Part shown: piece after piece, positions 13,691 through 47,154 of the stretch
Position numbering within the stretch: position 1 is the stretch's first letter
How the letters are laid out: each line of letters begins with the position of its first letter
IMG/VR virus record: IMGVR_UViG_3300045135_002615
Coordinates: 62,001 to 126,000 of that record
Strand: one strand, 5' to 3'
Length of the DNA: 64,000 bases
The notes under the pieces: generated by a model
What the model saw: only the letters and a program-made list of their open reading frames with translations
Databases searched by the model: none
What the model was told of the DNA's origin: nothing
Program-made: the position numbers and the translations under genes

Positions 13691-14524
13691 TCAGATGACC
13701 TTCACCTTGTAACCCTTACGCATGAGATACTTAACAACACGCTCCTTAAGAGCCTTCATGTGGGTTTTATGCTGGGTCAAGCTGTCTTTGTAGATGTTTC
13801 CGGTGACTGAGATCGTTTGCTTAGAAAGCATGACCCACAGTATAGATGGCGGATAACTAAACGCCTTGTTCGCCAATATGAACCCAAAATGATTATTTGC
13901 ATCTGAGAGCTCAAGCACACCTCCCTGTAGGGCTTTTTTTGCATGAAGATCATCAATAGCCTTATAAATAGCACCCTCTTGACCCAAGGAGGGCTGCCAA
14001 CGTGAGCTAGGGTCAAACCCGTTGCGTACCCTGACCATATAAGGGGAGGACAACTTTGAGACAGTCTTCTCATAAGGCGAAGGACCAAAGAAACCTGCGG
14101 TCTTTTTGACTGAAGAGACACGGAGGGCTTTCTTTAGGGTGAATGCCATGTCTTTGAAAGAGTTAAGGGACGCCTCTTTGGATACCTTAAACTCATATTT
14201 TTCCATGAGCCTTATAACTGCGACAGATAAGTTGCCTCGATTTAACCAAACTGCCCCATTTGTATATTCAATGCTATAGGGCAGTCCCTCGTTAACCGTT
14301 GATTGAGGAGCAACCTTAATAAGGTACCTTATTGCGTCCACTCCCCTTAGCCCCCTTTTATCAATGTCCTTATCTGGACTAGGGACGTAAATGACCTCAT
14401 ATACAGGTAGGTCACCAAGCGTGCTCTCAATATTCTCTTTTCTTCCAAAGATCGCCTCTTTCTCAAGCTCTGCGATACGAGTTTCAAGTTGGGCGATTTT
14501 CTGACTTGCTGTTAAGTGTCTCAT
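13691..14524 (-). CDS. Leader-bearing protein A (277 aa), possibly two tandem related domains
   Basis: Starts MRHLTASQKIAQLETRIAELEKEA; GAAGGAG SD; internal KEAS and KTAG. Confidence 0.8.
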   Translation of the reverse strand: MRHLTASQKIAQLETRIAELEKEAIFGRKENIESTLGDLPVYEVIYVPSPDKDIDKRGLRGVDAIRYLIKVAPQSTVNEGLPYSIEYTNGAVWLNRGNLSVAVIRLMEKYEFKVSKEASLNSFKDMAFTLKKALRVSSVKKTAGFFGPSPYEKTVSKLSSPYMVRVRNGFDPSSRWQPSLGQEGAIYKAIDDLHAKKALQGGVLELSDANNHFGFILANKAFSYPPSILWVMLSKQTISVTGNIYKDSLTQHKTHMKALKERVVKYLMRKGYKVKVI

Positions 14525-16681: not shown

Positions 16682-19285
16682 ATGAACTTCTTAGACGCAT
16701 TGACACAAGTCAATCGACCCAACATCAGCCCTAAGCCTTGGATGGCAGAGTGCGAGCTTATTTTCGGAACAAGAGACAACCTCGACAAGTGCATTGACGA
16801 GTGTATCAACTCTCCTACAGGCTTCTATGGTCTTGACACCGAGACTACAGGTCTTGACACGCGAGTATTCAACGGAAAGACAAGAGACACCATCGTGGGC
16901 ATCTGTCTCGCCCCGACCAAAGACAAGGGCTACTACTTCCCTGTCGCCCATAAAGAGGGAGTAGAGCACAACATTCCATGGAGGATCATGGGTCCTGCCC
17001 TTGAGCGTCTGTTTGATGTGTCTGTTAAGGCTATCCCTATCTTCCACAACAGCTCTTTTGATATGGAGGTGTTGGAGTTCAACGGATTCACCAAGCAACG
17101 TCTAGGTGAGAAGCGTTGGGACTCTCAGGCAGGGTGGCACGACACCTATATCTTGCAGTATCTCCTCAACCCTCGTGAGAAGGGCGGGCGTGGTCTTAAG
17201 CACTTGACGAACGTCCACCTCAAGAGGGAGATGATCGAGCTCTATGAGTTGTTTGGCATGGATAAGAAGGGTAGTAACTTGAACTACTCTCAACTAGACC
17301 CCTCATGGGAGCCTTGTGTGTGGTACGCCGCGAGTGATGCCATGTGTACGCTTGGGCTCTTTGAGATCCTCTATGCCGAGTATACAAGTAAGCCTGAGCA
17401 TACCAACTTCATCTATGCGTTGGAGAAGTCCTGTGCTTCCGCTACGCGGTGGATGCACCGCAACAGGGTCTACATTGATAGGGACACCGCCCTGAGCTAT
17501 GCCCAATCGGGTCAGAAGCTGTGGTTTGACTCTCTCGTAGAGGTCTACGAGGGTGCGTCAGAGATCCTTGGGCGTAATATTATGCCCAACTATGTACGCA
17601 TCTTGAAGGGAGAGCTGAAGGGTATGAACCGCTTCAATCCCGATGAGGTCGAGGGTATGAGCTACAAGGTACGCCTCGATGAAGCTCGTAAAGAGGCATT
17701 ACGCTTACACCCTGACCCTACAGAGGTGCTCACTAAGTCTGTCCCATACATTGACCGAGATGCAGGTACGGAGAGTGTTGAGTTCCCCTTAGTCTATGAC
17801 ATCATGTCACCACAGCAGTTCGGTCTGCTTTTGAGAGAGTTGGGTGTACCTGGCTTGAAGGCATCTGAGAAGTCGGGTCAAGTGGTCACGTCTAAAGATG
17901 TGATTGAAGTCGTGATCAAAGAGGCGAGTGAGACTTTCCCCTTCATGAAGAAGGTTAAGACCTTCCGTGAGCTAGGTAAGGCTATGGGTCAATACCTCAT
18001 CCCCTTCGTGGAGGATGTGGGTCCCGATGGGACACTCAAGCCCAAGTTTGATCAGTTCGCTGCCGATACGGGTCGCTTCTCATGTAAGACAAACAGCAAG
18101 CCTTGGAAGGTGCTTGATGGTGGCTGTCGTGTACCCTTTCAAGGTATTCCTGCGACCTATGATCCTAACAAGCCCGAAGCTATCGCCAAGATGCGTAAGT
18201 GTGTAGCTGTTAGAAACCCTGACTATTGGCTCGCGGCGATTGACTACGCAGGTGTAGAGTTAAGGCTCGTCACCAACTTGAGCGGTGAACCTCTATGGGA
18301 AGATGCCTTCTTCCGTTGTTCGGAGTGTGGTAAGGATTACCCTAAAGACATTCAAGAGGATGGATTTGCGGAAGCCCCTCCTGCGATCTGCTCATGTGGG
18401 TCGGATAAGATCGGTGATCTCCACACGATCACGGCGGTAGCCTTTTATGGAGAGGGAGCTAAGAAGCAAGACGATTGGAAGAAGCTCCGTGGTAACGGCA
18501 AGTCCTGTAACTTTGCTCTCTCTTATGGAGGTACGGGCAAGGCGGTACAGAGGTCTATTAAGGGTTGCTCAGCAGAGGAGGGTGAGGAGAAGTACAAGCT
18601 CTTTACCAAGACGTACAAGACGTTGACTGCGTGGTGGGCTCAGCAACACGCTTTTGGGCGTAAGCATGGTTTTGTAAAGACGGGCTTAGGTAGGGTTCAG
18701 CCCCTCCCTGACATCAACAACAAGAAGGAGTTTGGTCTCCGTTCTAAAGATGAGCGTAAGGCAGTTAATGGACCTGTACAGGGTACGAGTGCCGACATTA
18801 CTAAGCTCGCCATGAGTCTGATCTACAAAGCGGTCAAGGAGCGTGGTTGGGAAAACAAGCTCATGATGATCTTGACGGTACACGATGAGATTGTGTTTGA
18901 GATTCACAAGGACATCTTGAAGGAGGGTATTGAGCTACTCTGTGAGTTGATGACCCGTAATGAGGCGGTCAAGCGTATGAAGTGGCCTGTACCTTTGCTC
19001 GTAGACGTAGAGCTAGGTAAGGATTGGACAGTCCCTTACGACCTCAAAGAGATCAGAGAGGGCGAGGGGGATCCTGAGCTAGTCAAAATCTTTGGTGGTG
19101 TAAAGCCTTCGGAGAAGCCTGTTGAGGAGGAAGCTCCTAAGCAGGAGAAGCCGAAGGTGGACACACTTGAGATTGACGAGTTGACTGCGGATAGTGCGGT
19201 CAAGGTGGCGATGTGGGTTAGGGAGAGAGAGGGAGAGTGGGACGTGATCTATAGTGGGAGATCAGTCAAGGCACTACTCGTTTAA
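16682..19285 (+). CDS. polA: DNA polymerase family A with 3'-5' exonuclease (Phe762 type)
   Basis: ExoI DTETTG, ExoII HNSSFD, ExoIII YAASDA; motif A DYAGVELR; motif B RGNGKSCNFALSYG; motif C TVHDEIVFE. Confidence 0.97.
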   Translation: MNFLDALTQVNRPNISPKPWMAECELIFGTRDNLDKCIDECINSPTGFYGLDTETTGLDTRVFNGKTRDTIVGICLAPTKDKGYYFPVAHKEGVEHNIPWRIMGPALERLFDVSVKAIPIFHNSSFDMEVLEFNGFTKQRLGEKRWDSQAGWHDTYILQYLLNPREKGGRGLKHLTNVHLKREMIELYELFGMDKKGSNLNYSQLDPSWEPCVWYAASDAMCTLGLFEILYAEYTSKPEHTNFIYALEKSCASATRWMHRNRVYIDRDTALSYAQSGQKLWFDSLVEVYEGASEILGRNIMPNYVRILKGELKGMNRFNPDEVEGMSYKVRLDEARKEALRLHPDPTEVLTKSVPYIDRDAGTESVEFPLVYDIMSPQQFGLLLRELGVPGLKASEKSGQVVTSKDVIEVVIKEASETFPFMKKVKTFRELGKAMGQYLIPFVEDVGPDGTLKPKFDQFAADTGRFSCKTNSKPWKVLDGGCRVPFQGIPATYDPNKPEAIAKMRKCVAVRNPDYWLAAIDYAGVELRLVTNLSGEPLWEDAFFRCSECGKDYPKDIQEDGFAEAPPAICSCGSDKIGDLHTITAVAFYGEGAKKQDDWKKLRGNGKSCNFALSYGGTGKAVQRSIKGCSAEEGEEKYKLFTKTYKTLTAWWAQQHAFGRKHGFVKTGLGRVQPLPDINNKKEFGLRSKDERKAVNGPVQGTSADITKLAMSLIYKAVKERGWENKLMMILTVHDEIVFEIHKDILKEGIELLCELMTRNEAVKRMKWPVPLLVDVELGKDWTVPYDLKEIREGEGDPELVKIFGGVKPSEKPVEEEAPKQEKPKVDTLEIDELTADSAVKVAMWVREREGEWDVIYSGRSVKALLV

Positions 19286-19662
19286 ATGAAAATCCCATCC
19301 AACCTCCTGACGTTGGTTTTGTTTTGGAGTTCACGTTTTAACTCACGAGCAACTCTCTTAGGATTTGAGGCATAAGTGAGTTGCAACCAATCAACCCTGA
19401 TTGAAAATGAAGGGTCATTCCTACCAATGACTTCAACTTGCATATCAGCTTCTCTCCCCTGACTGTCAGTCAGCTCATATTTGACGTAGTAACCTCCGTG
19501 GGAATAAGAGTTCTTAAGGTTTATCTGCTCAACCTTATAACCTTCGTCCTCAAACACCTTCTCAATATCCTTTAAATATCTTAGGGGGTGTGCTTTTTTC
19601 TCAAGACGAGCGATACGGGATTCGAGGTGGGCGATTTTCTGACTGGCTGTTAGGTGTCTCAT
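19282..19662 (-). CDS. Leader-bearing protein B (126 aa)
   Basis: Starts MRHLTASQKIAHLESRIARLEKKA; AAAGGAGG SD 6 nt upstream. Confidence 0.8.
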   Translation of the reverse strand: MRHLTASQKIAHLESRIARLEKKAHPLRYLKDIEKVFEDEGYKVEQINLKNSYSHGGYYVKYELTDSQGREADMQVEVIGRNDPSFSIRVDWLQLTYASNPKRVARELKRELQNKTNVRRLDGIFI

Positions 19663-21006: not shown

Positions 21007-21891
21007 ATGAGACACCTAACAGCTAGTCAGAAAATCGCTCAGCTTGAAAACCGTATCGCCCACCTAGAGAAGCAAGCCTTCCTAGAAGGCATCCAACAAA
21101 AAGTCTCAGCTTGGATTGAAGCCAAGCTACCCTATAAGAGAGAAGTGAAGAAGGCAGTTCTTTCTGAGTACTCTATCAGGGACATGAAGAGTGCTGAAAA
21201 AGCAGCTAAATATGTGGTGAGGGATCTTAAAGATCCTCATCACATGACCGCCCTCAGCATGATTGTGAAGTCCGAGTCTACGTTCAAGGGTCGAGTGGAG
21301 ATGGCTCTCAATATTAAGAATCACCCTGAGATGTTTGAGGGGCGTACAGCGTCAGCGTTTGCTGTTGCCGCGTTGAGCGTAACAGCGTTACTTGTGGGTG
21401 TTGTTTGGACCTCGATTAAGCAGGTGTTCCGCCTTGCGTCACACAATAAGCAAGGCGGAATTCCCGTGATCGTGGGTGTCATCATCTCCATTTTGGGAGG
21501 TGTCGCTTTTCATGAGCTTCTTCTGACTCCTGAGAAAAAAACAAAAGAGATTGGGCACGCCATCTCAAGGGGTTTGATCGGTGAGCTCCCCGGAATTAAA
21601 TCAATAGAGAAGGTCTCAGAGAACATGGATGAGGTGGTCATAAAACTTGAGATTGCAGACACAGCAATGAAATACCCTACCGACATAGCTACTTTTTATC
21701 TCACCTTTGATACAACAAAGGATTATGTTTTCGTTGAAAACAGCTACATCAACGGGATAGCAGGGACATATGAAAATGTTTTAAAGAAGCTAGAGTCTCC
21801 AAGAGTTGAGGCTGAGTTGAGAGAAAAAATTAAGATTTGGGAAGATGACGATATTTTTCTTGGGCGAGATGACGATGACATGTCCATATAG
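21007..21891 (+). CDS. Leader-bearing membrane protein C (294 aa, two hydrophobic segments)
   Basis: Starts MRHLTASQKIAQLENRIAHLEKQA; hydrophobic stretches follow RTAS and KQGG. Confidence 0.8.
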   Translation: MRHLTASQKIAQLENRIAHLEKQAFLEGIQQKVSAWIEAKLPYKREVKKAVLSEYSIRDMKSAEKAAKYVVRDLKDPHHMTALSMIVKSESTFKGRVEMALNIKNHPEMFEGRTASAFAVAALSVTALLVGVVWTSIKQVFRLASHNKQGGIPVIVGVIISILGGVAFHELLLTPEKKTKEIGHAISRGLIGELPGIKSIEKVSENMDEVVIKLEIADTAMKYPTDIATFYLTFDTTKDYVFVENSYINGIAGTYENVLKKLESPRVEAELREKIKIWEDDDIFLGRDDDDMSI

Positions 21892-31428: not shown

Positions 31429-31621
31429 TGGGGTCTACCTTCCTGTTGGCTTGTTGCTCTTTGAGCTGTGTCTGAACTCTCTCAAGGGCATGTATCTGAG
31501 ACTGAACTTGACGAGCTTCCTTCTCATAGTAGTCCTTGAGAGCAATCAAGTTGCTCACAAAGTCCCCTAGCTGAGTACCCTCAAGGTTTGGTCTCTCTGA
31601 CTCACTCTTCCAATCACTCAT
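31421..31621 (-). CDS. Small coiled-coil protein
   Basis: Overlaps neighbours at both ends; heptad pattern. Confidence 0.6.
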   Translation of the reverse strand: MSDWKSESERPNLEGTQLGDFVSNLIALKDYYEKEARQVQSQIHALERVQTQLKEQQANRKVDPNG

Positions 31622-37600: not shown

Positions 37601-40347
37601 CTCTCACCACCTAATGAACTCGTCACAAAGTAGCTCACATACACATTAGAACCCGTCACATCACTCGTGAACGTGACCTCCTCGTTGGTGAAGCTATACC
37701 CACTAGCTAATGAAGCCCCCACATATACGGCGAGGTCTCCAATAACTTCACGACCCTCACCATTGTAAGACCACTTGTACCCATTGATGGACTCCGCTGG
37801 CTCATCCACAATCGAGAACAACAACGTCTCCGTAACACGCTCATCAGATCCCAACGGAAAATAACTCGCCTCTACCCCAACACCACTCCTTAAAGGCTCC
37901 CTAAACCTTATCACCCCTCGGCTCGCCTCATACCTGATGTCACTAACCTCCTCTACAAGCTCATCATAAACACCCGTTAGAGAAGCCCCGTTGATGTCAC
38001 ACTCCGCATGATCTAACCCCGCTAAGGGAAGACGCCTCAAGAGAACTACACCTACCCAACTAGAGTCCTCTATCCCATCTAACTTAAATACCACATACCC
38101 ATCTACCACCTCGAAACTCTGACCACCTTGAGCTACTCCCTCTGTGTACTCCATATCATCTATCAAAAGCACATATGAACCACCCAACACATGTGCGTCA
38201 CCACCCACATAGTACGGGGCTTCAATACGCTCATCCTTCAACACCACTAATGGAACTAATGAACCCCCTGAAACCCTCACACTCAACGTGTCTAAACTAG
38301 ACACCAAACCTAAGTCTAAATCCCCGTCTATACCATAGACCTTGTAGACCTTCAATGCGTCTCCCGCACTCACCTTCTCAAATACCTCCCCTACTAAACG
38401 GGTCATGTCAGGTGTCTCCTCCGCTACATAACCCTCTCGATAACCCCTATACGCTTCCCAACTAGAACCCGACTCTAGTGTACCCCCCGACACCACAACA
38501 CTCAACCCCAATACAGACTCGATACGCACATACGACTCTCCATCCGTCAACCAATCCCCTGAACGTAGCCCTTCTACCTCTACATCTAACTCTACAGACC
38601 TCTCCCCCGTCACCACAAAAACCTCCCCTCCACCTAACCTCTCTCCATATACACTCTGTAGACTCAACACTCCACCAACGCCCACCTCATAGTCCCGACC
38701 CTCCACCAAAGTCTGAGACCCCGCTCCCTCTACATACACACTCAAGGTACTCGTACCCGATAACACACCCGGTGAACTACTCAAGAGACTCGTAGCCTCC
38801 TTCACGTCACCCTCTAACGTACCCGAACCTATCCACTCAAAACCATTCGGCACCTCTCCAAACCTGTAGCTAACCTCAACCCCCTCTACAAGATCCCTGT
38901 CCCCAACCTTGAAGTGCTTACCATACCCATATACACCCACCATGTCTAAACGAGGCTCAAAGTTCAATACCTGATATGTCGAGACACCACTCACCTGACC
39001 CACAGCCTCATCGTCAAATGAATAGTAACCCACCACCGAAGGACTCGTTAAGTCCAACCTTAAACCCAACTCCGTGTGCGGCACTAAACCCAACTCTCCT
39101 AACACAACCCTCTCCCCTATCGTAGGATAACTCACCTCCGCTCCCACTACCAAATGACCCCTCGTGTCTATATACGCATCTCCTCCAACCACTACCCCAT
39201 CTAACAACTCCACCATCGACCCATTGACCAACCTAAATGAACCACTCACTTGACCCACTGGTAACAACGAAACCAATGGATTCATATACACACAACCCAC
39301 TGAACTACCCACCGCACCCACTTCCAATGACTCCTCATAGTCCCCCTCCCCATTAACTAACCAACCCGTGCGGTCACTTAACGCCCACACTAAACCACTA
39401 CCATTCGGTCTCTCCCCCGTTGCCTCCCCAATAGGCTCAATACCACTACCATCAGGTACTGAGATACGCTCCACTAACCCTACACTATCCTCCCCCAACA
39501 CAAGACCCTCATACTCATAAATAACACCCTCCTCCCCAAGCAACTCACCCGTCAATAAATCTACTTGTACCTCTCCCCTACGCACAGCTCCAAACGAACC
39601 CTCTACATACACTACATCTACATAGCCCTTACCCTTCTCTCTCAAGAGAAGATACTCATGACGTAAAGGCACTGGGCTTAACCTATCCCCACTCACCACA
39701 CTCTCAACCCCTAAGAGCTCATCACTCACATAGATGGCACTACCCGATAACCCCTTTAAAATGCCCCCCTCCACATAAGCCACTACTCCCGAACTCTCTT
39801 CTAATGGTACATCCTCACTCCCTATCAAGTACACCCCATCTAACGTGTGTAACTCCCCACTCGTACCCACCTCGTCCCCATTAGATACCTCCACTCCCTT
39901 ACCACCACCCTTCAAAACCCAACGACCTCCCTTGTACTCGAACCTTGTACGCACCGCGTCATTCTGAGTCCACCAAAAACCCATACGCCCTATCGTAGCC
40001 ACCGCACTACTCAAGCCCGCTTGATCACTCTCAATCACCGTACCCCCATACAAAATACGCAACGCTCCCGTTACACTCTCTACTACACCATCCCTTAAAC
40101 CCGTAGCATAGTAATAGAGACCTCCCACCTCCTCTATGTACGTCAACGTGATCTCCCTCTCCCCACTCCATACTGAACCATCACCCTTAGCTATCCATAA
40201 GACATCTCCAAGAGATCCTATCTCATACGCTACTCGACCCCTCACCTCTCCACCACCCACCACTCGGTTGTCTATACGCCTTAACGCAAGACCTGTCTCC
40301 TTGTCGTTCTTCTCCCCACTACGGACATCAAGTAATACTTTGCTCAT
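31618..40347 (-). CDS. Giant acidic beta-rich virion protein (2909 aa), probable baseplate/tail-appendage component
   Basis: 8.7-kb uninterrupted ORF rich in D/E/G/V/S/T; start moved to 40347 (GGAG SD; late motif at 40393-40405). Confidence 0.75.
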   Translation of the reverse strand: MSKVLLDVRSGEKNDKETGLALRRIDNRVVGGGEVRGRVAYEIGSLGDVLWIAKGDGSVWSGEREITLTYIEEVGGLYYYATGLRDGVVESVTGALRILYGGTVIESDQAGLSSAVATIGRMGFWWTQNDAVRTRFEYKGGRWVLKGGGKGVEVSNGDEVGTSGELHTLDGVYLIGSEDVPLEESSGVVAYVEGGILKGLSGSAIYVSDELLGVESVVSGDRLSPVPLRHEYLLLREKGKGYVDVVYVEGSFGAVRRGEVQVDLLTGELLGEEGVIYEYEGLVLGEDSVGLVERISVPDGSGIEPIGEATGERPNGSGLVWALSDRTGWLVNGEGDYEESLEVGAVGSSVGCVYMNPLVSLLPVGQVSGSFRLVNGSMVELLDGVVVGGDAYIDTRGHLVVGAEVSYPTIGERVVLGELGLVPHTELGLRLDLTSPSVVGYYSFDDEAVGQVSGVSTYQVLNFEPRLDMVGVYGYGKHFKVGDRDLVEGVEVSYRFGEVPNGFEWIGSGTLEGDVKEATSLLSSSPGVLSGTSTLSVYVEGAGSQTLVEGRDYEVGVGGVLSLQSVYGERLGGGEVFVVTGERSVELDVEVEGLRSGDWLTDGESYVRIESVLGLSVVVSGGTLESGSSWEAYRGYREGYVAEETPDMTRLVGEVFEKVSAGDALKVYKVYGIDGDLDLGLVSSLDTLSVRVSGGSLVPLVVLKDERIEAPYYVGGDAHVLGGSYVLLIDDMEYTEGVAQGGQSFEVVDGYVVFKLDGIEDSSWVGVVLLRRLPLAGLDHAECDINGASLTGVYDELVEEVSDIRYEASRGVIRFREPLRSGVGVEASYFPLGSDERVTETLLFSIVDEPAESINGYKWSYNGEGREVIGDLAVYVGASLASGYSFTNEEVTFTSDVTGSNVYVSYFVTSSLGGESVLRLSSGVEVPKFSLSSGVSTMTCPVDVRDRVSVGDLISIGFSKFFVTSVTASEVGLSPTPLSSLEAESFDVLNVPVVVYDGYELRSSFRQVEGVRVESVARGTELRLSGDLSPLMGSGSLVITDGVCYRVSTVRVEEGVTILVAEGQVRAHSYTSSGTRLLVSLRASYFEGDKVLSLSTSVVGIDYKLLRYRGGVATLLIEGRDYELREGEVELVDGVVGGDQYYFLHTARGVLSPIQVAGGRVSYPRYSVSYTERRVPTDYTGLPVTAGCVVESPDTFQVTIMDKGVYGSIVASRLKAESLRSRTTSGKSVATEQTFKGVGLGLYDLLADDFVARDRIREYDGYLRPLDSVLSTATGSLVGDYDGQFKFELPIAGDWGGAGFEDPLTMEVYPRYVVLAARALEQGYMLPSDPMSVNDVRELTALMEDQGSLVENEIDDYLMVGWDRSRVFDFTTGVPVSPYVARWARASEPSIYSRLFNERTEYYTYRVPGDLDSTTNGSVIALVGNDAQGRITDITSLTLARRPARFRIVNYSRDGFADFEPLSAGKPTFILSAVELQSFPIDSTTGYPDVSQFITYGGDTPDVLTGDPSHVFGGLSVGDKLKISVDGVFHDLLNKAELAVYDGASAYKTARVGAIYQGCLVVLNGVPSSYSINGDDLYTYVPKRGDTLALSYRADLDESDAQPSTFRIGVDVGLNTATGELYDISLPSLSEPSWPLQELTGQNVPEAYAPLQGIVTFNNTNTSPFEYPALKGLDVCDAGDHDLPYLNTLGEREVLEGIQPNFEAGSAQTLNLYSGELEYEYPDEVRDDLTQITGGHLVTSEDFSNLNGFIEQTPRQGDLILLRPDDSGVDGSGATGIMELMSIDGAQLSPPFFETPSDGASYEVLNAQVHMLPSGLGSGVTFQETLIFNVATSEWDQSLVEFEFSNGFPVGDIMDKVFNTNGTFILHVYAPTTYEFHYKITFRYDGASWIVSTTSPTGVVEVATNILTVSYSATSIGVLQQPIPNVLTLAEEPQWPFNGYETWITNTLWTDLIDLDVTADIGVNTRTLSIDFFLNYRIDMRFGLNTNSYVLSDRLSFYDADADFTTWIQSDTDPSVLLAAGGGVAPLDVTPLFYVYGSLMNVWQYGGIGTQLIESYANAFSRFGYSHIRLGEAWDVIDANTLRVRSLFDIERTNDPMSLFVGAEVRDGEVIFIGSGEYGRIDPTGTTDSAPAELTNLVSFEGSLANVEEGDLVYIERGHNAGVHRVKRITPSALSATYTEQIGSSDILPVVFPTVVEVLDNGDGTGTLVTDSSDLSLYYNGSGLMEAIILLNDNYLTQPASTQNNSFDEVFYRSYIRLKYDSINGGSMTFTFSSANGTENPTYGNVDSNQVEELTYQQMNSVIGSGGQVVCGIHKVPFNFLATGLLPYEVPTSLASPLTIDLTLAGGLSVSVTVDESYIERDEEGIMRALLLPSNLVGGSWESIFPTIEDTPQGNTYGQGFLTPNDSFTLTITAEAAIHLDRAFPRLMRDYRGTTPKVFNDGTSQVRSLADEVGLGNLPAWTFTEVSTIKVRRLRRFSRIMLEMLNSLLGLKNLYEQKVGLVDHLSFTDGVYTLTSKKVDVFGVEALGGKDTQVGDFDEALKVGDYITMYDSSSDEVFKMKIVEATPGSAKGISLSGDPNGDMVSFKVTTRTHLIPQEQSFNEFLEHGFDLIYSSTARVPTENTLEDTSVDFSELITGTPSDYYLVIDPQGALEGAPLERGAPAQGDGPLGVGQPNTLDDNRGSYRVISVDGSSLTVEFISGSSNPHEIFLPSVDGDTSNPLRVTSPIDNGTYTTSSDSIEPFSYRILKRRDLLDRNLAEVVLFFRERVLSWSERVRLFNQLVPLPLTWAAYEQTDSIYLVGENDPTHPSNDLIFGVLTPHEPPYPYTDTMLSLTDRRLLVEDPQLEAQGHTLFEGMVTLIGNGISSMGMRSKRYAWINTRTNRVTGTLPRMDRIDYQNPDLTALEDII

Positions 40348-40392
40348 ATCTCTAGCTCCACTCAGATGGTCAGACCATAGACTACCACCCAC

Positions 40393-41697: not shown

Positions 41698-42954
41698 TTA
41701 GTATCTTCTTCTTAGGCGAGAATCCTGACGGCTGAACCCTTTAGGGAGGGTAGCACCTGTGAGATCAGCTCCACTGAGGTCTGCTCCACTGAGGCCAGCG
41801 TGACTGAGGCCAGCGTGACTGAGGTCTGCTCCACTGATTTTAGCGTATTCAAGGTCAGCGTGACTGAGGTTAGCATCATTGAGTTTAGCCCCATTGAGTT
41901 CAGCACCATTGAGTTTAGCCCCATTGAGTTCAGCCCCATCGAGTTTAGCCCCTTTGAGGTTAGCTTCACTGAGGTTAGCTTCAATGAGCTGAGCATCATA
42001 GAGTTTAGCTTTAGTGAGGTTAGCACCATTGAGATAAGCTCCTGTGAGATCAGCATAACTGAGGTCAGCCCCACTGAGGTCAGCTCCTGCGAGTTTAGCT
42101 TTAGTGAGGTTAGACCCCATGAGGTAAGCCTTAGTGAGCTTAGCCTTAGTGAGGTTCGCCCCTGTGAGTTTAAACCTAACGAGGTTAGTTCCACTGAGGT
42201 CAGCGTGACTGAGGTTCGCCCCATTGAGTTCAGCCTCATAGAGTTTAGCCCCTGTGAGTTTAGCCCCTGTGAGATCAGCATCTGTGAGATCAGCCCCCTC
42301 AAGGTTGGCTCCACTGAGGTCAGCCTTACTGAGATCTGCATCTGTGAGGTCAGCCTTTCTGAGATCAGCACCCTTGAGGTTAGCGTTATTGAGCTCAGCA
42401 TCTGTGAGATCAGCTTCAGTGAGGTTAGCCCCACTGAGATCAGCCTTACTGAGCTTAGCTCCTATTAGGTCAGCCCCTCTGAGATCAGCATCTGTGAGAT
42501 CAGCCTTACTGAGATCAGCGTTATTGAGATAAGCATCTGTGAGATCAGCCCCTCTGAGATCAGCACCCTTGAGGTTAGCGTTATTGAGCTCAGCGACAGT
42601 GAGATCTGCATCAGTGAGATCTGCATCAGTGAGGTCAGCCTTTGTGAGGTTAGCCCCTCTGAGGTTAGCCCCTCTGAGCTTAGCCCCAATGAGCTTAGCC
42701 CCAATGAGATCAGCCTTACTGAGCTCAGCCTCACTGAGATCAGTCCAACTGAGATCAACACCACTGAGATCAGTCCAACTGAGGTCAAGACCACTGAGGT
42801 CTTGACCTGAGAAGTCTTTCTCCCCCTTAGCGAGTGCCTCCACTAGGGACTCCCTAGTGTGCTTAAGATTGCCCTTTAGGGAGGCTTGCTTCTCTAGATG
42901 AGAGATACGGTTTTCGATTTGAGCGATTTTTTGACTGGTTGTTAAGTGTCTCAT
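41698..42954 (-). CDS. Pentapeptide-repeat protein carrying the conserved leader (protein D)
   Basis: About 70 A(D/N/K/E)Lxx repeats after MRHLTTSQKIAQIENRISHLEKQA. Confidence 0.95.
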   Translation of the reverse strand: MRHLTTSQKIAQIENRISHLEKQASLKGNLKHTRESLVEALAKGEKDFSGQDLSGLDLSWTDLSGVDLSWTDLSEAELSKADLIGAKLIGAKLRGANLRGANLTKADLTDADLTDADLTVAELNNANLKGADLRGADLTDAYLNNADLSKADLTDADLRGADLIGAKLSKADLSGANLTEADLTDAELNNANLKGADLRKADLTDADLSKADLSGANLEGADLTDADLTGAKLTGAKLYEAELNGANLSHADLSGTNLVRFKLTGANLTKAKLTKAYLMGSNLTKAKLAGADLSGADLSYADLTGAYLNGANLTKAKLYDAQLIEANLSEANLKGAKLDGAELNGAKLNGAELNGAKLNDANLSHADLEYAKISGADLSHAGLSHAGLSGADLSGADLTGATLPKGFSRQDSRLRRRY

Positions 42955-42997
42955 GAGTGAGTCCTTTCTTAGTTGAGTTGGTTAAGGTATAGATAAA

Positions 42998-43036
42998 TTA
43001 AAAAGGCGACCCGCTTCCTTGACTAGGAAGAGGTCT
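42998..43036 (-). terminator. Probable terminator of the leftward 43-47 kb operon
   Basis: GACC.CTTCCT...AGGAAG..GGTC stem then T-tract on the minus strand, right after the stop at 43040. Confidence 0.6.
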
Positions 43037-43039
43037 GTT

Positions 43040-43396
43040 TTAGTCCGCGTGGGTGATCTTTACGTTGTAGTCACCGCCCATGTCGTATGAAGGGATATGT
43101 AGGGTCATCCCCTCCCATGTGACGAGGCGGGGGTCAGTATAAACAAAGAGAGCATCCTCAGCATCCTCCTCATCACAGAGATGCTCAGGGCAGATAAGGA
43201 GAATGCCTGATTGAAGATAGAGGGTATCACCTGTAGACAGATGATAGTGACCGACCCCCAACCTAATGGCTACTAGAGGTGTGTGCCCGCCGACATAGAA
43301 CAGATTAGCTTGACCTTTGTTGGGGGTATTCTCCAATAGAGTCTCGATATGTTCCTCAGCAATAGCGTGTATGGGGTCTCCGAGATAGCACTTCAT
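43040..43396 (-). CDS. Hypothetical protein
   Basis: Start moved to 43396 (AAGGA SD just after the upstream stop). Confidence 0.6.
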   Translation of the reverse strand: MKCYLGDPIHAIAEEHIETLLENTPNKGQANLFYVGGHTPLVAIRLGVGHYHLSTGDTLYLQSGILLICPEHLCDEEDAEDALFVYTDPRLVTWEGMTLHIPSYDMGGDYNVKITHAD

Positions 43397-43400
43397 TAGT

Positions 43401-43811
43401 TTAATCCTTCTTAAGGAACTTGACTTGGTGGGTTGCAGGCTTGTTAGGCAACCTGTTGAGGAGTTGGTCCACCTCAGCTTGAGGGGCTTCCTTATAGAGA
43501 GCCCATCTGAGGTTGCGGCTCTCGGCAATGTACTTCTCATAGAGATCAATGCCGAGTGCTTCAATGAGTTGATCCCTTGACAGCCCCTCTAGGGAGACCG
43601 AGGGTCGTTGAGGTACAACGAGAGCCTTTGAGCGGATACCATTAAAGGTAATGGTCTCTTGTCCGTCACCTGTGTGGTCAATGAGCTCTTGTTTAAAGTC
43701 CCGTACAATGTCTTGAGCGAGGTGGCTGAGATACCACAGCTTAGAAGCGGCATCAATGCGGTGCTCAAGAGGTGCGTTCGTGTCTTGCACGATGTCAAAG
43801 AGATAGTTCAT
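43401..43811 (-). CDS. Hypothetical protein
   Basis: GGAGG SD; ATGA overlap with the upstream gene. Confidence 0.7.
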   Translation of the reverse strand: MNYLFDIVQDTNAPLEHRIDAASKLWYLSHLAQDIVRDFKQELIDHTGDGQETITFNGIRSKALVVPQRPSVSLEGLSRDQLIEALGIDLYEKYIAESRNLRWALYKEAPQAEVDQLLNRLPNKPATHQVKFLKKD

Positions 43812-44374
43812 GTCACCACCTCCCACTCATGGTACCACCTTGTCCTTGAAGTGCGATTTGTTGTCGCTGCGACCACAGGACCAAGTGATAGGGTAACCTC
43901 ATACTGAGCCCCACTCTTAGCCCCTTTGATAGTGACCTTCGAGCCCACGGGGATCGTCTCTAAGTTGTCAAAGAACGCCTTGACTGAGGCGAGTTCATTT
44001 TTTTCAGGGATGCGGTACTTGAGCTTTTTGAGCTCAACACGCCGCGTGTGTTTTGCAGGTTGGTTAGGGTGCCCTAAAACAACTAGGTCATCTTCCTTAT
44101 GGAGAATGAAGAAGTCCATACCCTTGAGGTACCCACTCGTCACAGAGACAGGTGTACCTACTTCAAGGGGTAGATTCTTGTAGTAGTCCTTAATCTCTTT
44201 GACCACCTTCCTCACAGGCTTGGGGTCATGGTAGGTGGTAGCCACATCAAGGCTGATACCACACAGAGGTTGCTCAACTAAGTCAATGTCATATCCATCA
44301 GGGTTGGTGCCGTTCATGGCGTAGTAGTTGATGCAGATCTGCTCCGCGAGGAGCTTGTTCTTGTTAAAGTCCAT
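43808..44374 (-). CDS. Paralog 3 of a tandem family (conserved N-cap plus SH3/KOW-like barrels)
   Basis: MDFNKNKLLAEQICINYYAMNGTNPDGYD...KEIKDYYKNLPLEVGT. Confidence 0.75.
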   Translation of the reverse strand: MDFNKNKLLAEQICINYYAMNGTNPDGYDIDLVEQPLCGISLDVATTYHDPKPVRKVVKEIKDYYKNLPLEVGTPVSVTSGYLKGMDFFILHKEDDLVVLGHPNQPAKHTRRVELKKLKYRIPEKNELASVKAFFDNLETIPVGSKVTIKGAKSGAQYEVTLSLGPVVAATTNRTSRTRWYHEWEVVT

Positions 44375-44964
44375 TATGACACCACCTCCAGCTCACAGGT
44401 GAGCCGATGAGGTCCCCATGTAGCATCCTTATCCTCAGCGACTCGAACATACAAGTTGTTCGGCTCAACCTCAATAACCCACCTTAACCCATCGAACGAA
44501 GGTGAGGTCACCTTGTCACCGACAGAGATATCTTTATGTTGGTACTCGACCTCGTCCTTGTTAAGAGGGCGAGACCTGAGCTGAGAGATCTTAACCCATG
44601 TGGTTGACACATAGGAGGTGAGGGGGCTCTCAGACTTTGGGTAGTCAAATGAGACCAAAGCATTGTCGCCCAAGACTTTTAAGATAATAGCCTGAGCCCC
44701 CTTGTACCTCCCCGACTTTGGCACAACAGTAGTACCTACCTCAAGGGGTAGGTTCTTGTAGTAGTCCTTGATCTCCTTGATCATCTTCTTAGCGACACTA
44801 GGTGTGCTGTAGGTGGTAGCCACATCAAGGCTGATACCACAAAGGGGGTAACCCACTAAGTCAATGTCATATCCATCAGGGAAGGTACCATGCATGGCGA
44901 AGTAGTTGATGCAGATCTGCTCCGCGAGACGGCGGTTGGCATCTTTGAATGGGTAGTCAATCAT
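44374..44964 (-). CDS. Paralog 2 of the tandem family
   Basis: LAEQICINYFAMHGTFPDGYD...KEIKDYYKNLPLEVGT. Confidence 0.75.
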   Translation of the reverse strand: MIDYPFKDANRRLAEQICINYFAMHGTFPDGYDIDLVGYPLCGISLDVATTYSTPSVAKKMIKEIKDYYKNLPLEVGTTVVPKSGRYKGAQAIILKVLGDNALVSFDYPKSESPLTSYVSTTWVKISQLRSRPLNKDEVEYQHKDISVGDKVTSPSFDGLRWVIEVEPNNLYVRVAEDKDATWGPHRLTCELEVVS

Positions 44965-45530
44965 GAGAGCACCTTGAGTTCCTCAGTTAAGAAGGTGAGA
45001 CCGTATAAAGCTTTGGGGTCGGGGCTGACGATGACTTTAAGTCCTTCAACTTTAATCACAAACATCACCTCACCCAACACATCCACCTTCGTACCAACCG
45101 CAGGAGGTGTCTTGGGGATCCAAAAGGTCTCCCCTCTAACGAGCGGGCGAGCCTTTACCTTCGCTGCCTTAACCCACACATACGACATGTAATCAAATTT
45201 CTGCCCAACATATGGGTCGAGGGTCACCAAGAGATGTCCATTTGACTTAATGATGACGTTTCCATTCCTGAAGCCACCATACATACGACCTGCATTGTAG
45301 GTAACAGCAAGACCCTCTGTGATGGGGAGATTCTTGTAGTAAATATTAATCTCCTTGACCACCTTACGCACCTCTGTGATTGGGGCATAATCCTCGACCT
45401 CCTTGAGGTTCATTCCACATAATGCTGTAGTAGATAAGGTGGGGTCATACCCATCAGGGTTGGTGCCGTGCATGGCGAAGTAGTTGGCACTAATGGTTTC
45501 AGAGAGTTGTAAATTCTTGTTAAAATCCAT
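44961..45530 (-). CDS. Paralog 1 of the tandem family
   Basis: MDFNKNLQLSETISANYFAMHGTNPDGYD...KEINIYYKNLP; AAGGAG SD. Confidence 0.75.
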   Translation of the reverse strand: MDFNKNLQLSETISANYFAMHGTNPDGYDPTLSTTALCGMNLKEVEDYAPITEVRKVVKEINIYYKNLPITEGLAVTYNAGRMYGGFRNGNVIIKSNGHLLVTLDPYVGQKFDYMSYVWVKAAKVKARPLVRGETFWIPKTPPAVGTKVDVLGEVMFVIKVEGLKVIVSPDPKALYGLTFLTEELKVLS

Positions 45531-45541
45531 GTTCATTCTCC

Positions 45542-45994
45542 TTATGCGTTGCGGTAGTCAAGGACAAGAGCAAGGACATCAGACTGAGCCCAACCCATTG
45601 AAGGGATGAATGTAGCCTGCTCACCTTGCTTGATGATGTCACCTGACAAGACACAGGTGACATCACACTTGACCTCGTGGACGGTTGCAGTTGAGAGCCC
45701 CGCTGAACGAGGGATCTTGATCTTCTTGAGATCTACCCCCCTGTCCTGCCCCATCTTGATGATTTCCGCCTTCACCTTGCGAGCCTCCTTGCGAGCCTCC
45801 TTGATCTCCTCCTTCTCACCTAAGCAGGCGGAGCGGAGGGGACACCCCTGACATACAGGGTCTGTCTTAACCCCCTTAGTGAAGCAAGGGGTAGCCCTCA
45901 TCATCAAAGCCATAGTGGTAGGGCATGAGGGGTCATAGAGGCTAGAGACAGCCTCGTTTGTTGCGTTCTCGATTTGCTTGTACTCGTTCATCAT
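45542..45994 (-). CDS. Cys-rich (Zn or Fe-S) protein
   Basis: CFTKGVKTDPVCQGCPLRSAC; AAGGAG SD. Confidence 0.65.
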   Translation of the reverse strand: MMNEYKQIENATNEAVSSLYDPSCPTTMALMMRATPCFTKGVKTDPVCQGCPLRSACLGEKEEIKEARKEARKVKAEIIKMGQDRGVDLKKIKIPRSAGLSTATVHEVKCDVTCVLSGDIIKQGEQATFIPSMGWAQSDVLALVLDYRNA

Positions 45995-46014
45995 GATGAT
46001 GTTCTCCTTTTCAA

Positions 46015-47154
46015 TCACATGTCAATGGGGGTAGGGGCGTCAACACTCTGCTCGTTGACAACGTCTGAGCTGAGGTAGGTGTCGATAGCACCCTGTAAGG
46101 CATCACGGTTGTGGTCCTCCATGAGGTGACCAACCACGCTCTCAAAGGTGTCCTTGAGAGCGTGGTTGAAGGTGTCTGCAAGACCCTCTGCGAGCCAATC
46201 AAGTGCGAGGCGACCCCACATCTTTGCTTGACGCAGCGTGACCTCGATACCCATGCGATCCTCGTGGCTTACACGGCGAACCGCACGAATACAATCAGAG
46301 AGGGTTTGCACCTCAAGCTCTGTGAGGACAGGGAAGGCAGCGGCGATCACCTTCTTCTCAAACGCTTGGGTGTGAGGTGGGACCATCACCGCTGAGAGGC
46401 GTGAAAGGAAGCTCGCATCCTTCGGGCGGGTGATGTTGCCACGACCCCCATCCCCATCAGCACCTGAATTGGAGGTGAGGATAACGCGAGTACCCTTGAG
46501 GACAGGGAACATCTTACCCGTCACAGGGTGGGCGATCTTCTCCTTGTCAAGCTCAGTCGTTTGGCGGAGGAACTCGACCTGCTCAGGGGTGGCTCGGTCA
46601 TAATCACTAAAGAGGATGATTGAGGGGACGGTGATCTTGAGAAGCCCCTTGTCGTCAAGCCTCTCCACCTTGTAGTTCTCCTCCTCCATCTGCTTGATGA
46701 GATCCTCACGAACCTCACTCTCAAGAGAGGAGAGATCACGCACACAGCTCACACCGCGTGTCGCACGGAGGAGATCACCATCAGTGACCTTCGTCACCGA
46801 AGCTCCGCGAACCTCAACGAGCTCAACACGAGCAAGGTAGTCAGCAGGGTTGACGCCCACCTTGAAGGCGAAGCGGGCGAGGGGGCGGTTGGTGGCATGG
46901 GCGAGGGCATCTGTCCACACCTCCTTACCCGTGCCCGCCGTGCCGTTCACTACGAGGTGGCTCTTCTTCTGAAAGAATGTGGCGAGGCGGAGAGGGTTCT
47001 TGCTTGTGGAGGTGTCCTCCACATAGTCATCAGCTCGCTCGCCTGGTAGGTAGCCTGCGTCGATGATCTCCTGCTCGGTGAGAGGGGATACGACTCGCTT
47101 GATGCCGAAGAACGACACCGTCTGAAGTTTATTAAAGTTAGGTGCTGAACGCAT
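46015..47154 (-). CDS. MoxR/CobS-like AAA+ ATPase with non-canonical Walker motifs
   Basis: GTAGTGKE; ILFSDYDRA; sensor-1 LTSNS; D.SFLSRL arginine finger; partner vWA genes adjacent. Confidence 0.8.
   Translation of the reverse strand: MRSAPNFNKLQTVSFFGIKRVVSPLTEQEIIDAGYLPGERADDYVEDTSTSKNPLRLATFFQKKSHLVVNGTAGTGKEVWTDALAHATNRPLARFAFKVGVNPADYLARVELVEVRGASVTKVTDGDLLRATRGVSCVRDLSSLESEVREDLIKQMEEENYKVERLDDKGLLKITVPSIILFSDYDRATPEQVEFLRQTTELDKEKIAHPVTGKMFPVLKGTRVILTSNSGADGDGGRGNITRPKDASFLSRLSAVMVPPHTQAFEKKVIAAAFPVLTELEVQTLSDCIRAVRRVSHEDRMGIEVTLRQAKMWGRLALDWLAEGLADTFNHALKDTFESVVGHLMEDHNRDALQGAIDTYLSSDVVNEQSVDAPTPIDM

What the first reader, a model, noticed from the sequence alone, without database searches (positions are those of the whole stretch)
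41698..42954. Very long pentapeptide-repeat (DNA-mimic fold) protein carrying the cargo leader
Seen: the leader is followed by about 70 uninterrupted pentapeptide repeats. Established: this right-handed beta-helix mimics B-DNA in MfpA and Qnr, which bind gyrase. Inference: a long DNA mimic delivered with the genome could decoy restriction or other DNA-sensing defences, or modulate topoisomerases, before phage genes are expressed. The 15-nt periodicity also allows length variation.
Basis: partly seen in the sequence, partly recalled or inferred. Interest (0 to 1): 0.65.

Follow-up and report, generated by a model that had tools for sequence, protein, structure and literature searches.

The report
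Tagged long pentapeptide-repeat phage protein
An uncultured marine jumbo phage encodes a real, unusually long pentapeptide-repeat rod that starts with the same 24-residue helix tag as about 18 other proteins of this phage and more than a thousand protein families in related phages. The shared tag suggests, but does not prove, that the rod is loaded into a shared assembly such as the virion and delivered with the DNA.

Summary
Window 41698-42954 (- strand) encodes a 418-aa protein made of four parts:
- a 24-aa N-terminal tag (MRHLTTSQKIAQIENRISHLEKQA);
- a 21-aa helical linker;
- 72 pentapeptide repeats in one unbroken register (Pfam PF00805, E=2e-114), modelled as an 18-coil beta-helix about 86 A long;
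- a basic 13-aa tail.

- It heads 19 proteins in this 297-kb IMG/VR jumbo myophage and 13-32 in each of three fully scanned relatives.
- It matches 1,183 protein clusters in a 1.84-billion-protein library, almost always at residue 1.
- It is under purifying selection (pN/pS 0.18).
- It sits on fast-turnover orphan proteins behind a promoter-like motif shared with structural operons.

This matches the logic of the T4 capsid-targeting sequence. Virion packaging, tag cleavage and injection remain untested, and no prohead protease was found.

The DNA-decoy idea is only an inference from the fold.
- The rod's acidity is ordinary for long pentapeptide-repeat proteins (PRPs).
- It lacks Qnr loops.
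- PRPs tested elsewhere did not block BREX.

The tag-PRP fusion is specific to this genome, which carries nine PRP genes.

Verdict: a new variant of known kinds, with function open.

The parts
41698..42954 (-). CDS of the tagged pentapeptide-repeat protein (418 aa plus stop)
42883..42954 (-). N-terminal tag, residues 1-24 (MRHLTTSQKIAQIENRISHLEKQA). It is an amphipathic helix with heptad a/d positions I, I/L, I, L, A.
   Evidence: AF2 helix 6-42
42820..42882 (-). Linker, residues 25-45. It is predicted helical and is not conserved among tagged proteins.
41740..42819 (-). 72 pentapeptide repeats (residues 46-405), equal to 18 coils of a right-handed quadrilateral beta-helix about 86 A long. Net charge is -21 and pI is 4.5.
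41701..41739 (-). C-terminal basic tail GFSRQDSRLRRRY, modelled at low confidence
42313..42615 (-). Internal duplication. Segments 42313-42420 and 42508-42615 are 80-100% identical at a 195-nt (13-pentad) offset, and include an exact repeat of at least 40 nt at 42358/42553.
42962..42967 (-). Shine-Dalgarno-like AAAGGA, 7 nt before the ATG
42977..43000 (-). Promoter-like TAATTTATC core followed by TTAACCAAC. This is a degenerate copy of the class A motif and 5' leader cassette shared by tagged genes.
43014..43030 (-). Hairpin CTTCCTAGTCAAGGAAG between the upstream gene's stop (43040-43042) and the promoter-like site. It may be a terminator that makes the PRP gene its own transcription unit. On the - strand the T-run starts 8 nt after the stem, so it does not meet the scanner's criteria on that strand.
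13691..14524 (-). Other tagged gene in the window (277 aa, orphan)
19282..19662 (-). Other tagged gene in the window (126 aa counted from the tag's Met, orphan)
21007..21891 (+). Other tagged gene in the window (294 aa counted from the tag's Met, orphan, two TM-like segments)

Best explanation
The gene makes a rigid rod about 86 A long and moderately acidic: 72 pentads forming an 18-coil PRP beta-helix. The rod is joined through a flexible helical linker to a 24-residue amphipathic-helix tag specific to this phage clade.

**Step 1 (shown).** The tag is a shared, selected module at the exact N-terminus of about 19 otherwise unrelated proteins in this phage. It also heads more than 1,000 protein clusters in related uncultured marine jumbo phages.

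**Step 2 (inferred, about 0.75).** The tag docks all of these proteins to one common partner or assembly.

**Step 3 (inferred, about 0.5).** That assembly is the prohead interior, as with the T4 capsid-targeting sequence. The proteins would be packaged late and leave with the DNA. The tag may be trimmed at basic-x-A-S/G sites that flank it.

**Step 4 (inferred, weakest).** Once in the new host, the DNA-sized rod occupies the DNA-binding groove of a host DNA-handling enzyme before any phage gene is expressed. Candidates are gyrase or a restriction or other sensing complex. Its DNA-like width would let it travel down the tail tube without unfolding.
For: **Fold**
- PF00805 scores E=2e-114.
- The AF2 model has pLDDT 83.8, with helix 6-42 followed by a beta-helix.
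- PDB matches are all PRPs, including QnrB1, MfpA and AlbG.

**Tag**
- The iterated profile finds 19, 32, 13 and 14 tagged proteins in G000, G001, G002 and G005.
- The tag's Met lies 11 residues before the LE core in 52 of 77 copies, and conservation collapses after the tag.
- pS is 0.59 against pN 0.10 among the seven G000 copies.
- 1,183 clusters match at E<=1e-3, nearly all at residues 1-28.

**Cargo turnover**
- The six other canonical-tag cargos of G000 have no homologue in relatives whose portal is 87% identical.
- Almost all cargos are orphans.

**Late-type expression**
- The ATAGTYnYTTTAT motif lies 44-57 nt before the start codons of tagged genes, a tail-terminator-like gene, a 3113-aa gene and the second tagged PRP, and heads the baseplate operon.
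- Leaderless PRPs sit behind TATAAG-type sites together with ligase, helicase and UvsX.

**Candidate processing motif**
- [KR][ST]A[SG] occurs 1.70 times per 1000 aa in tagged proteins against 0.18 in other ORFs, mostly just after the tag.

**Precedent**
- The T4 CTS is a 10-20-aa N-terminal propeptide that loads even foreign proteins into heads. Giant-phage heads carry dozens of ejection proteins (PMC5694885).
- MfpA acts as a T-segment mimic on gyrase, and phages are known to target gyrase (PMC10886550).
Against: - There is no virion or expression data, and the phage is known only from metagenomes.
- No prohead protease (PF03420, PF04586) or T4-type capsid protein (PF07068) was found. The tag lacks the L/I-x-E and S/A/G-x-E cleavage motifs.
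- The tag is occasionally internal or repeated: an N-domain-tag-WGR protein, and one protein with three copies. That fits a docking or zipper module better than a strict N-terminal signal.
- The PRP's own promoter is a degenerate copy of the class A motif.
- Class A also precedes a TopIB gene, so it is not strictly structural.
- The rod's acidity is ordinary for long PRPs.
- McbG and QnrB did not inhibit BREX.
- Most PRPs have no known DNA-related role.
Confidence: 0.35

Rival explanations
1. The tag does load the protein into the virion, but the PRP is a structural piece rather than a decoy. It would be a rigid strut or spacer of an internal core or inner body, or part of an ejected trans-envelope conduit. 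Its basic C-terminal tail would touch DNA or a partner.
For: - PRP rods can be structural: DotG/IcmE of the Legionella type IV secretion channel is among the sequence matches.
- PHROGs with PRP stretches include 'tail fiber protein' families.
- The unbroken 72-pentad length is extreme: only 3 of 117 homologues reach 70. That suggests length itself matters.
- The basic tail SRLRRRY is present.
- A conserved tagged family and the tagged 294-aa protein carry TM-like segments, as ejection proteins often do (PMC5694885).
Against: - The gene is absent from close relatives with 87%-identical portals. A core structural part should be conserved.
- The same genome has eight other PRPs, most without a tag and behind early-type sites. 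That points to a host-directed rather than architectural family.
Confidence: 0.25
2. The tag is not a packaging signal. It is instead a coiled-coil docking or oligomerisation module, or a recognition site for a phage kinase, protease or chaperone, that gathers many late proteins on a cytoplasmic hub. The PRP would then act inside the already infected cell. For example, it could act on host gyrase or the phage's own TopIB, or shield replicating or packaging DNA.
For: - With heptad assignment g=R and e=E, the tag resembles self-pairing leucine zippers. RIARLE is also the start of the c-Jun zipper.
- The tag can be internal or present three times in one protein.
- MRRSAS and RTAS fit basophilic R-R-x-S kinase sites.
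- The phage encodes a type IB topoisomerase behind the same promoter-like motif and has no type II enzyme.
Against: - Conservation covers all faces of the helix, charged positions included, across more than 1,000 cargos. That argues for one fixed partner rather than generic self-association.
- A conserved delivery tag on hypervariable orphan payloads is the hallmark of packaged or secreted effectors.
- The homodimer prediction gave no verdict either way.
Confidence: 0.25
3. The tag anchors the proteins to the outside of the particle as head or tail decorations or fibres. The PRP would be a surface rod.
For: - A conserved N-terminal anchor with variable distal parts is the usual design of phage fibres and spikes.
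- BFVD matches beyond the PRPs include tailspikes with beta-helices.
Against: - Cargos are small (median 136 aa), mostly globular orphans without fibre features.
- A PRP beta-helix is a single-chain rod, not a trimer.
- Two cargos carry WGR nucleic-acid-binding domains, which makes little sense on the outside.
Confidence: 0.1

Closest known systems
T4 capsid-targeting sequence (CTS) on internal proteins IPI-III and Alt, and the propeptides of giant-phage (SPN3US/phiKZ) ejection proteins
   Same: - A short conserved N-terminal peptide sits on several unrelated, fast-evolving proteins of one phage.
- Expression is late-type.
- The cargo includes candidates for host-directed action.
- IPI* is a packaged inhibitor of a restriction enzyme (own knowledge; CTS facts from PMC5694885).
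   Different: - There is no sequence similarity.
- The tag is 24 aa and a heptad helix.
- No T4- or HK97-type prohead protease or cleavage motif was found.
- The tag is sometimes internal or repeated.
- The scale is far larger: 19-32 proteins per genome and more than 1,000 clusters.
- Packaging is unproven.
Topoisomerase-interacting pentapeptide-repeat proteins (MfpA, Qnr, AlbG, McbG)
   Same: - It has the right-handed quadrilateral beta-helix of A(D/N)LXX pentads, with a net negative surface and DNA-like width.
- MfpA mimics a DNA T-segment on GyrB (PMC10886550).
   Different: - It has 72 pentads against about 30-40 in those proteins.
- It has no Qnr-type loops.
- No C-terminal dimerisation helix was modelled with confidence.
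- Sequence is closer to cyanobacterial PRPs such as HetL and Np275/276.
- It carries an N-terminal tag.
- It is encoded by a phage that has no type II topoisomerase.
Phage and plasmid DNA-mimic anti-restriction proteins (Ocr, ArdA, Arn)
   Same: The idea matches: an elongated acidic protein that stands in for DNA and acts at the very start of infection.
   Different: - The fold is unrelated.
- Net charge density is much lower: -21 over 360 residues, with 55 acidic and 34 basic residues.
- The PRPs that have been tested did not replace Ocr against BREX (PMC7261183).
Encapsulation peptides of bacterial microcompartments and cargo-loading peptides of encapsulins
   Same: A short amphipathic helix plus linker on many different cargos directs them into one protein shell (own knowledge). 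The architecture here is formally the same: tag, then linker, then cargo.
   Different: The sequences and the shell system are different. The resemblance is a lead only and was not tested.

Membership tests
Pentapeptide repeat protein family (Pfam PF00805, Rfr fold) | Tandem A(D/N)LXX pentads in one register | tested here: met
   PF00805 E=2.1e-114. There are 72 consecutive pentads, with A at i-2 in 63 and L at the centre in 70.
Pentapeptide repeat protein family (Pfam PF00805, Rfr fold) | Right-handed quadrilateral beta-helix with four pentads per coil | tested here: met
   The AF2 model has pLDDT 83.8 with a strand every fifth residue. Foldseek matches to beta1, HetL, Np275/276, QnrB1, MfpA and AlbG have probability 1.00.
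Gyrase-protecting PRPs (MfpA/Qnr/AlbG/McbG) | Size of about 180-220 aa with a C-terminal dimerisation element. Qnr proteins also have loops A and B interrupting the helix. | tested here: not met
   The protein is 418 aa with no interruption in 72 pentads. The C-terminal helix 408-417 has pLDDT under 50. The homodimer prediction gave no verdict.
Gyrase-protecting PRPs (MfpA/Qnr/AlbG/McbG) | Binds type IIA topoisomerase and alters its activity or drug sensitivity | not testable with these tools
   This needs a gyrase supercoiling or ATPase assay with the purified protein. The phage itself has no GyrA/GyrB-type genes.
CTS-type packaged internal/ejection proteins (T4 IPs, giant-phage E proteins) | A short N-terminal peptide shared by several unrelated proteins of the same phage | tested here: met
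   19 proteins carry it in this genome, seven of them near-identical copies. The Met is at a fixed distance from the core motif, and pN/pS is 0.18.
CTS-type packaged internal/ejection proteins (T4 IPs, giant-phage E proteins) | Late expression together with head genes | tested here: inconclusive
   A promoter-like motif is shared with the baseplate operon and a tail-terminator-like gene. It also precedes TopIB, and the PRP's own copy is degenerate. No transcript data exist.
CTS-type packaged internal/ejection proteins (T4 IPs, giant-phage E proteins) | Propeptide removed by a prohead protease at a defined motif | tested here: inconclusive
   PF03420 and PF04586 are absent, and L/I-x-E and S/A/G-x-E motifs do not fit the tag. 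An enriched [KR][ST]A[SG] motif flanks the tag but is unverified.
CTS-type packaged internal/ejection proteins (T4 IPs, giant-phage E proteins) | Presence in purified virions and transfer to the host | not testable with these tools
   All genomes are uncultured and metagenome-derived.
DNA-mimic anti-restriction proteins (Ocr/ArdA type) | Dense array of acidic side chains that imitates the phosphate backbone | tested here: inconclusive
   Net charge is -21 with pI 4.5. There are 55 acidic residues over about 86 A, but also 34 basic ones. That is the 17th percentile among long PRPs. No surface map could be computed.

The most novel reading that the evidence does not exclude
The 24-residue helix is a universal loading signal of a clade of marine jumbo phages. 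It lets each phage pack a private, rapidly changing arsenal of dozens of pre-made effectors, drawn from more than 1,000 families in nature. The tagged PRP is a ready-made, DNA-shaped decoy that travels folded through the tail with the genome and disarms a host DNA-sensing or DNA-processing enzyme in the first seconds of infection.
Probability: 0.2. Interest if true: 0.85.

Novelty: new variant of a known kind. Interest (0 to 1): 0.6.

Why it matters
If the tag is a packaging signal, it would be the largest known set of phage proteins sharing one address label. It would give a sequence-only way to list the injected proteome of an uncultured jumbo-phage clade. It could also serve as a portable handle for loading foreign proteins into large capsids, as the T4 CTS has done.

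Phage pentapeptide-repeat proteins are common: 496 phage records match this one. None has a demonstrated role. A tagged, late-expressed PRP in a genome with eight other PRP genes is a good entry point for finding out what they do, including the long-standing idea that the fold works as a DNA mimic outside gyrase protection.

Tried and rejected
- **Megablast of the locus against 50,697 phage records:** no match.
- **Exact DNA pattern of the G000-type leader in IMG/VR:** no match.
- **Word-based protein search with residues 1-46:** nothing. The G000 subtype of the tag is private to this genome. The family was found only after building a profile from relatives.
- **LR745208.1 (PolA 48%) and a 618-kb relative (PolA 43%):** no tag.
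- **Head genes:** PF03420, PF07068 and PF04586 are absent. PHROGs, Pfam and PDB sequence searches of portal-adjacent and terminase-adjacent genes found no capsid protein, scaffold or protease. One atlas look-alike search was uninformative.
- **Homodimer prediction of the whole protein:** no verdict. This is not evidence either way.
- **Literature string search for the tag:** only unrelated leucine zippers such as c-Jun.
- **Rejected: the leader is an RNA-level or recent gene-conversion artefact.** Synonymous sites differ at 59% while the peptide is kept.
- **Rejected: recent horizontal arrival of the PRP.** GC is 0.50 and GC3 is 0.44, within about one sd of the genome's genes.
- **Rejected: the antisense and overlapping ORFs are genes.** They are periodicity by-products.

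Full report
**Setting.** The window is bases 62001-126000 of a single 296,642-bp contig with 47% GC. IMG/VR holds it as a linear viral record, and CheckV rates it 95% complete.
- It is a jumbo myophage. It has baseplate wedge proteins (phrog_6, phrog_43), a family A DNA polymerase, a large terminase and a portal.
- The nearest deposited phage record shares only 48% PolA identity.
- IMG/VR holds closer relatives with 54-73% PolA identity. Their portal is 87% identical and their terminase 84-85% identical.
- Proteins of the clade come from metagenomes, including Tara Oceans surface water. No isolate exists.

**The observation.** The ORF at 41698-42954 (- strand) encodes 418 aa.
- Pfam Pentapeptide scores E=2.1e-114.
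- One reading register carries a hydrophobic centre in 72 of 76 pentads. The other four registers carry 7 or fewer.
- Residues 46-405 are 72 pentads without a single insertion. A is at i-2 in 63, L at the centre in 70, and D, N or K at i-1 in 59.
- AlphaFold2 (33-row alignment, mean pLDDT 83.8) gives a helix at residues 6-42 and then a beta-helix with a strand every fifth residue up to residue 402. Low-confidence breaks at 110-125 and 326-328 fall in canonical pentads, so they are probably model artefacts.
- Every significant PDB match is a PRP: designed beta1, HetL, Np275/276, DotG, Qnr, MfpA, AlbG and NleL.
- Eighteen coils at about 4.8 A give a rod of about 86 A. It has 55 acidic and 34 basic residues, net charge -21 and pI 4.5. 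One face is the most acidic, at net -10.
- The last 13 residues, GFSRQDSRLRRRY, are basic.

**The leader.** The first 24 residues recur at the start of three other window ORFs and seven ORFs genome-wide.
- An iterated profile finds the motif in 19 proteins of this genome. It finds 32 in a complete 376-kb relative, and 13 and 14 in two partial ones. Further copies appear in relatives down to 54% PolA identity. None appear at 43-48% identity.
- The consensus is M-R-R-[ST]-A-S-E-[IV]-I-R-[ND]-L-E-x-R-[IV]-A-R-L-E-[KR]-Q-A.
- The Met lies exactly 11 residues before the LE core in 52 of 77 copies. Conservation vanishes right after the tag. Both the heptad a/d positions and the exposed E/R positions are fixed.
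- This genome has its own subtype, MRHLTASQKIAQLE, plus one ancestral-type copy. Among the seven subtype copies, synonymous sites differ at 59% and non-synonymous sites at 10%. The peptide is therefore selected, not the RNA, and not a recent copy event.
- A profile search of 1.84 billion representative proteins returns 1,183 clusters at E<=1e-3 and 115 at E<=1e-10, almost all matched at residues 1-28.
- Neither Pfam nor PHROGs has a model for the tag. A literature string search finds only unrelated zippers.

**What the tag sits on.**
- Of 71 tagged proteins in four genomes, Pfam recognises two PRPs (both in this genome), two WGR proteins, one DUF4258 and one HAAS.
- Of the 149 best metagenomic representatives that were scanned (from the 150 listed), only one has a WGR domain. 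The median length of the 150 is 136 aa, and none is a PRP.
- The six other canonical-tag cargos of this genome have no homologue in the close relatives.
- Four of 71 tagged proteins have TM-like segments.
- The tag is occasionally internal: an N-domain-tag-WGR protein sits beside the portal region in two relatives. One protein carries three copies.
- A short motif, [KR][ST]A[SG], is about nine times enriched in tagged proteins. It lies mostly just after the tag or at domain borders. The tag itself begins RR(S/T)AS and ends (K/R)QA(S/G). This is a candidate processing or modification site, but it is unverified.

**Expression signals.**
- Tagged genes of the relatives share a cassette of about 65 nt: TAATAGTTTATTTATA, then ATAAGTGATCTCTTTAACCTTAACCAAATGGAGAA, then ATG.
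- In this genome the promoter-like part, ATAGTYnYTTTAT, lies 44-57 nt before the start codons of two tagged genes, the second tagged PRP and a 3113-aa gene. It also lies there before a gene that an atlas search likens to SP10-type tail terminators, at the tool's 0.90 threshold for more than a lead. A further copy heads the baseplate operon, just inside the called start of its first gene.
- A different TATAAG-type site precedes ligase, helicase, UvsX and several untagged PRPs.
- The target's own upstream region has a hairpin, a degenerate TAATTTATC site, TTAACCAAC and AAAGGA.
- I read this as late-type expression. The same motif also precedes a type IB topoisomerase gene, and no transcript data exist.

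**The PRP in its genome.**
- This phage has nine PRP genes. The 376-kb relative has one, untagged, and the two partial relatives have none.
- The target lies in a variable gap between a conserved 2924-aa gene and a conserved AAA_5 ATPase block.
- Its GC and GC3 are those of the genome.
- Its best matches are PRPs of its own genome (about 50% identity) and of filamentous cyanobacteria (about 40-50% identity), as expected from repeat-level likeness. There is no orthologue.
- An unbroken run of 70 or more pentads is rare: 3 of 117 homologues reach it. Acidity is not rare: it sits at the 17th percentile.
- The 15-nt units are only 71% alike. One segment is duplicated 195 nt away with an exact core of at least 40 nt. 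In-frame 13-pentad changes are therefore conceivable but unobserved.

**Mechanism.** The best-supported reading is a rigid, DNA-sized rod carried on a shared address tag. Four patterns match the T4 capsid-targeting sequence and giant-phage ejection proteins (PMC5694885):
- one conserved tag;
- fast-turnover orphan payloads;
- a late-type promoter motif;
- jumbo-phage biology.

I therefore favour loading into the prohead and delivery with the DNA. The decoy step rests only on what MfpA, Qnr and AlbG do (PMC10886550), and several facts temper it:
- the rod's acidity is ordinary;
- it lacks the features of the Qnr and MfpA group;
- McbG and QnrB failed against BREX (PMC7261183);
- structural PRPs such as DotG exist.

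The phage has no type II topoisomerase. If a topoisomerase is the target, it is the host's gyrase or, speculatively, the phage's TopIB.

**Verdict.** The sequence feature is real and well defined. The PRP is a new member of a known fold family. Its fusion to a clade-wide tag, which I could not find described in Pfam, PHROGs or a literature string search, makes it a new variant. Packaging, cleavage, injection and target remain open.

Noticed in passing
Whole genome G000 and relatives G001, G002, G003, G005 and G006. Window copies at 13691-14524(-), 19282-19662(-), 21007-21891(+) and 41698-42954(-).: A 24-residue N-terminal helix tag, MRR(S/T)ASEIIRNLExRIARLE(K/R)QA, heads 13-32 proteins in each genome scanned in full (9 and 3 in two further partial relatives) and 1,183 protein clusters in a 1.84-billion-protein library. 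It has no Pfam or PHROG model and no literature string match. This genome has its own subtype, MRHLTASQKIAQLE.
   Followed up: yes
Genome G000: 4082-4885, 8645-9634, 9873-10496, 11142-12248, 18232-18888, 133255-134568(-), 190873-192489, 247230-248930. All lie outside the window.: The genome holds eight further pentapeptide-repeat genes. Five cluster in the first 19 kb, and two of these (9873, 11142) sit behind TATAAG-type sites. One (190873-192489, 539 aa) has a weak version of the tag and a class A promoter-like site. Two (133255 and 247230) share an AEAKAKA-repeat region and a conserved C-terminal end.
   Followed up: partly
Genome-wide, for example window 12343(-) (genome 74343), genome 162479(+), 239194(+) and 258416(+): There are two promoter-like motif classes. 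ATAGTYnYTTTAT lies 44-57 nt before the starts of tagged genes, a tail-terminator-like gene, giant genes and TopIB, and heads the baseplate operon. TATAAG(T) lies 26-45 nt before ligase, helicase, UvsX and untagged PRPs.
   Followed up: partly
Relatives, for example L068:5868-5957 (G001 145868-145957) and L088 (G002 167802-167891): A 5' cassette of about 65 nt is conserved upstream of tagged genes. It holds the promoter-like site, GTGATCTCTTTAACCTTAACCAA and GGAGAA. The TTAACC direct repeat is unexplained.
   Followed up: partly
Tagged proteins of all four genomes. In the window: 21007-21891 (EGRTAS before a TM-like segment) and 13691-14524 (KKTAG).: The short motif [KR][ST]A[SG] is about nine times enriched in tagged proteins (1.70 against 0.18 per 1000 aa). 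It lies mostly at residues 22-27 or at domain borders. It may be a processing or phosphorylation site.
   Followed up: partly
G001 78091-79824 and G002 214555-216330; window 27396-28064(-): WGR-domain proteins beside the portal region of relatives carry the tag internally, in the order N-domain, tag, WGR. The homologue in this window (222 aa) has only the WGR part and no tag. G005 44957-46291 has three tag copies in one 433-aa protein.
   Followed up: partly
Genome 172395-173816(-), which is L005:6395-7816: A 473-aa protein matches the eukaryotic/poxvirus-type topoisomerase IB catalytic core (PF01028, E=3.4e-12) and sits behind a class A promoter-like site. No GyrA/GyrB-type genes are present in the genome.
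   Followed up: partly
Window 31618-40392(-), especially 36001-40000: The N-terminal part of a 2924-aa protein is a G/V/S/E/Y-rich low-complexity region that gives a GC skew of -0.34 to -0.58. The protein is conserved (37-39% identity) in relatives. Two further giant genes (3139 and 3113 aa) lie at genome 248997-267814.
   Followed up: no
Window 43808-45536(-): Three tandem paralogues of 188-196 aa (38-53% identical over the aligned parts) lie near the PRP gene. They have no homologue in the relatives.
   Followed up: no
Genome 158074-160562, just downstream of the portal gene: Three genes (274, 397 and 156 aa) have no homologue in relatives, although the adjacent portal is 87% identical. The major capsid protein, scaffold and prohead protease of this clade could not be identified by any sequence method used.
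   Followed up: partly
Window 54386-55810(+) and 56969-57646(+): Two proteins have weak tag-like N-terminal heptads (SLEARIASLE, MEHRIASLERRL). They scored only marginally with the first profile and not with the iterated one.
   Followed up: no
Genome 136003-136452 (L003:10003-10452): A dCMP/cytidine deaminase domain protein (PF00383, E=1.6e-17) lies in the conserved block upstream of the terminase.
   Followed up: no
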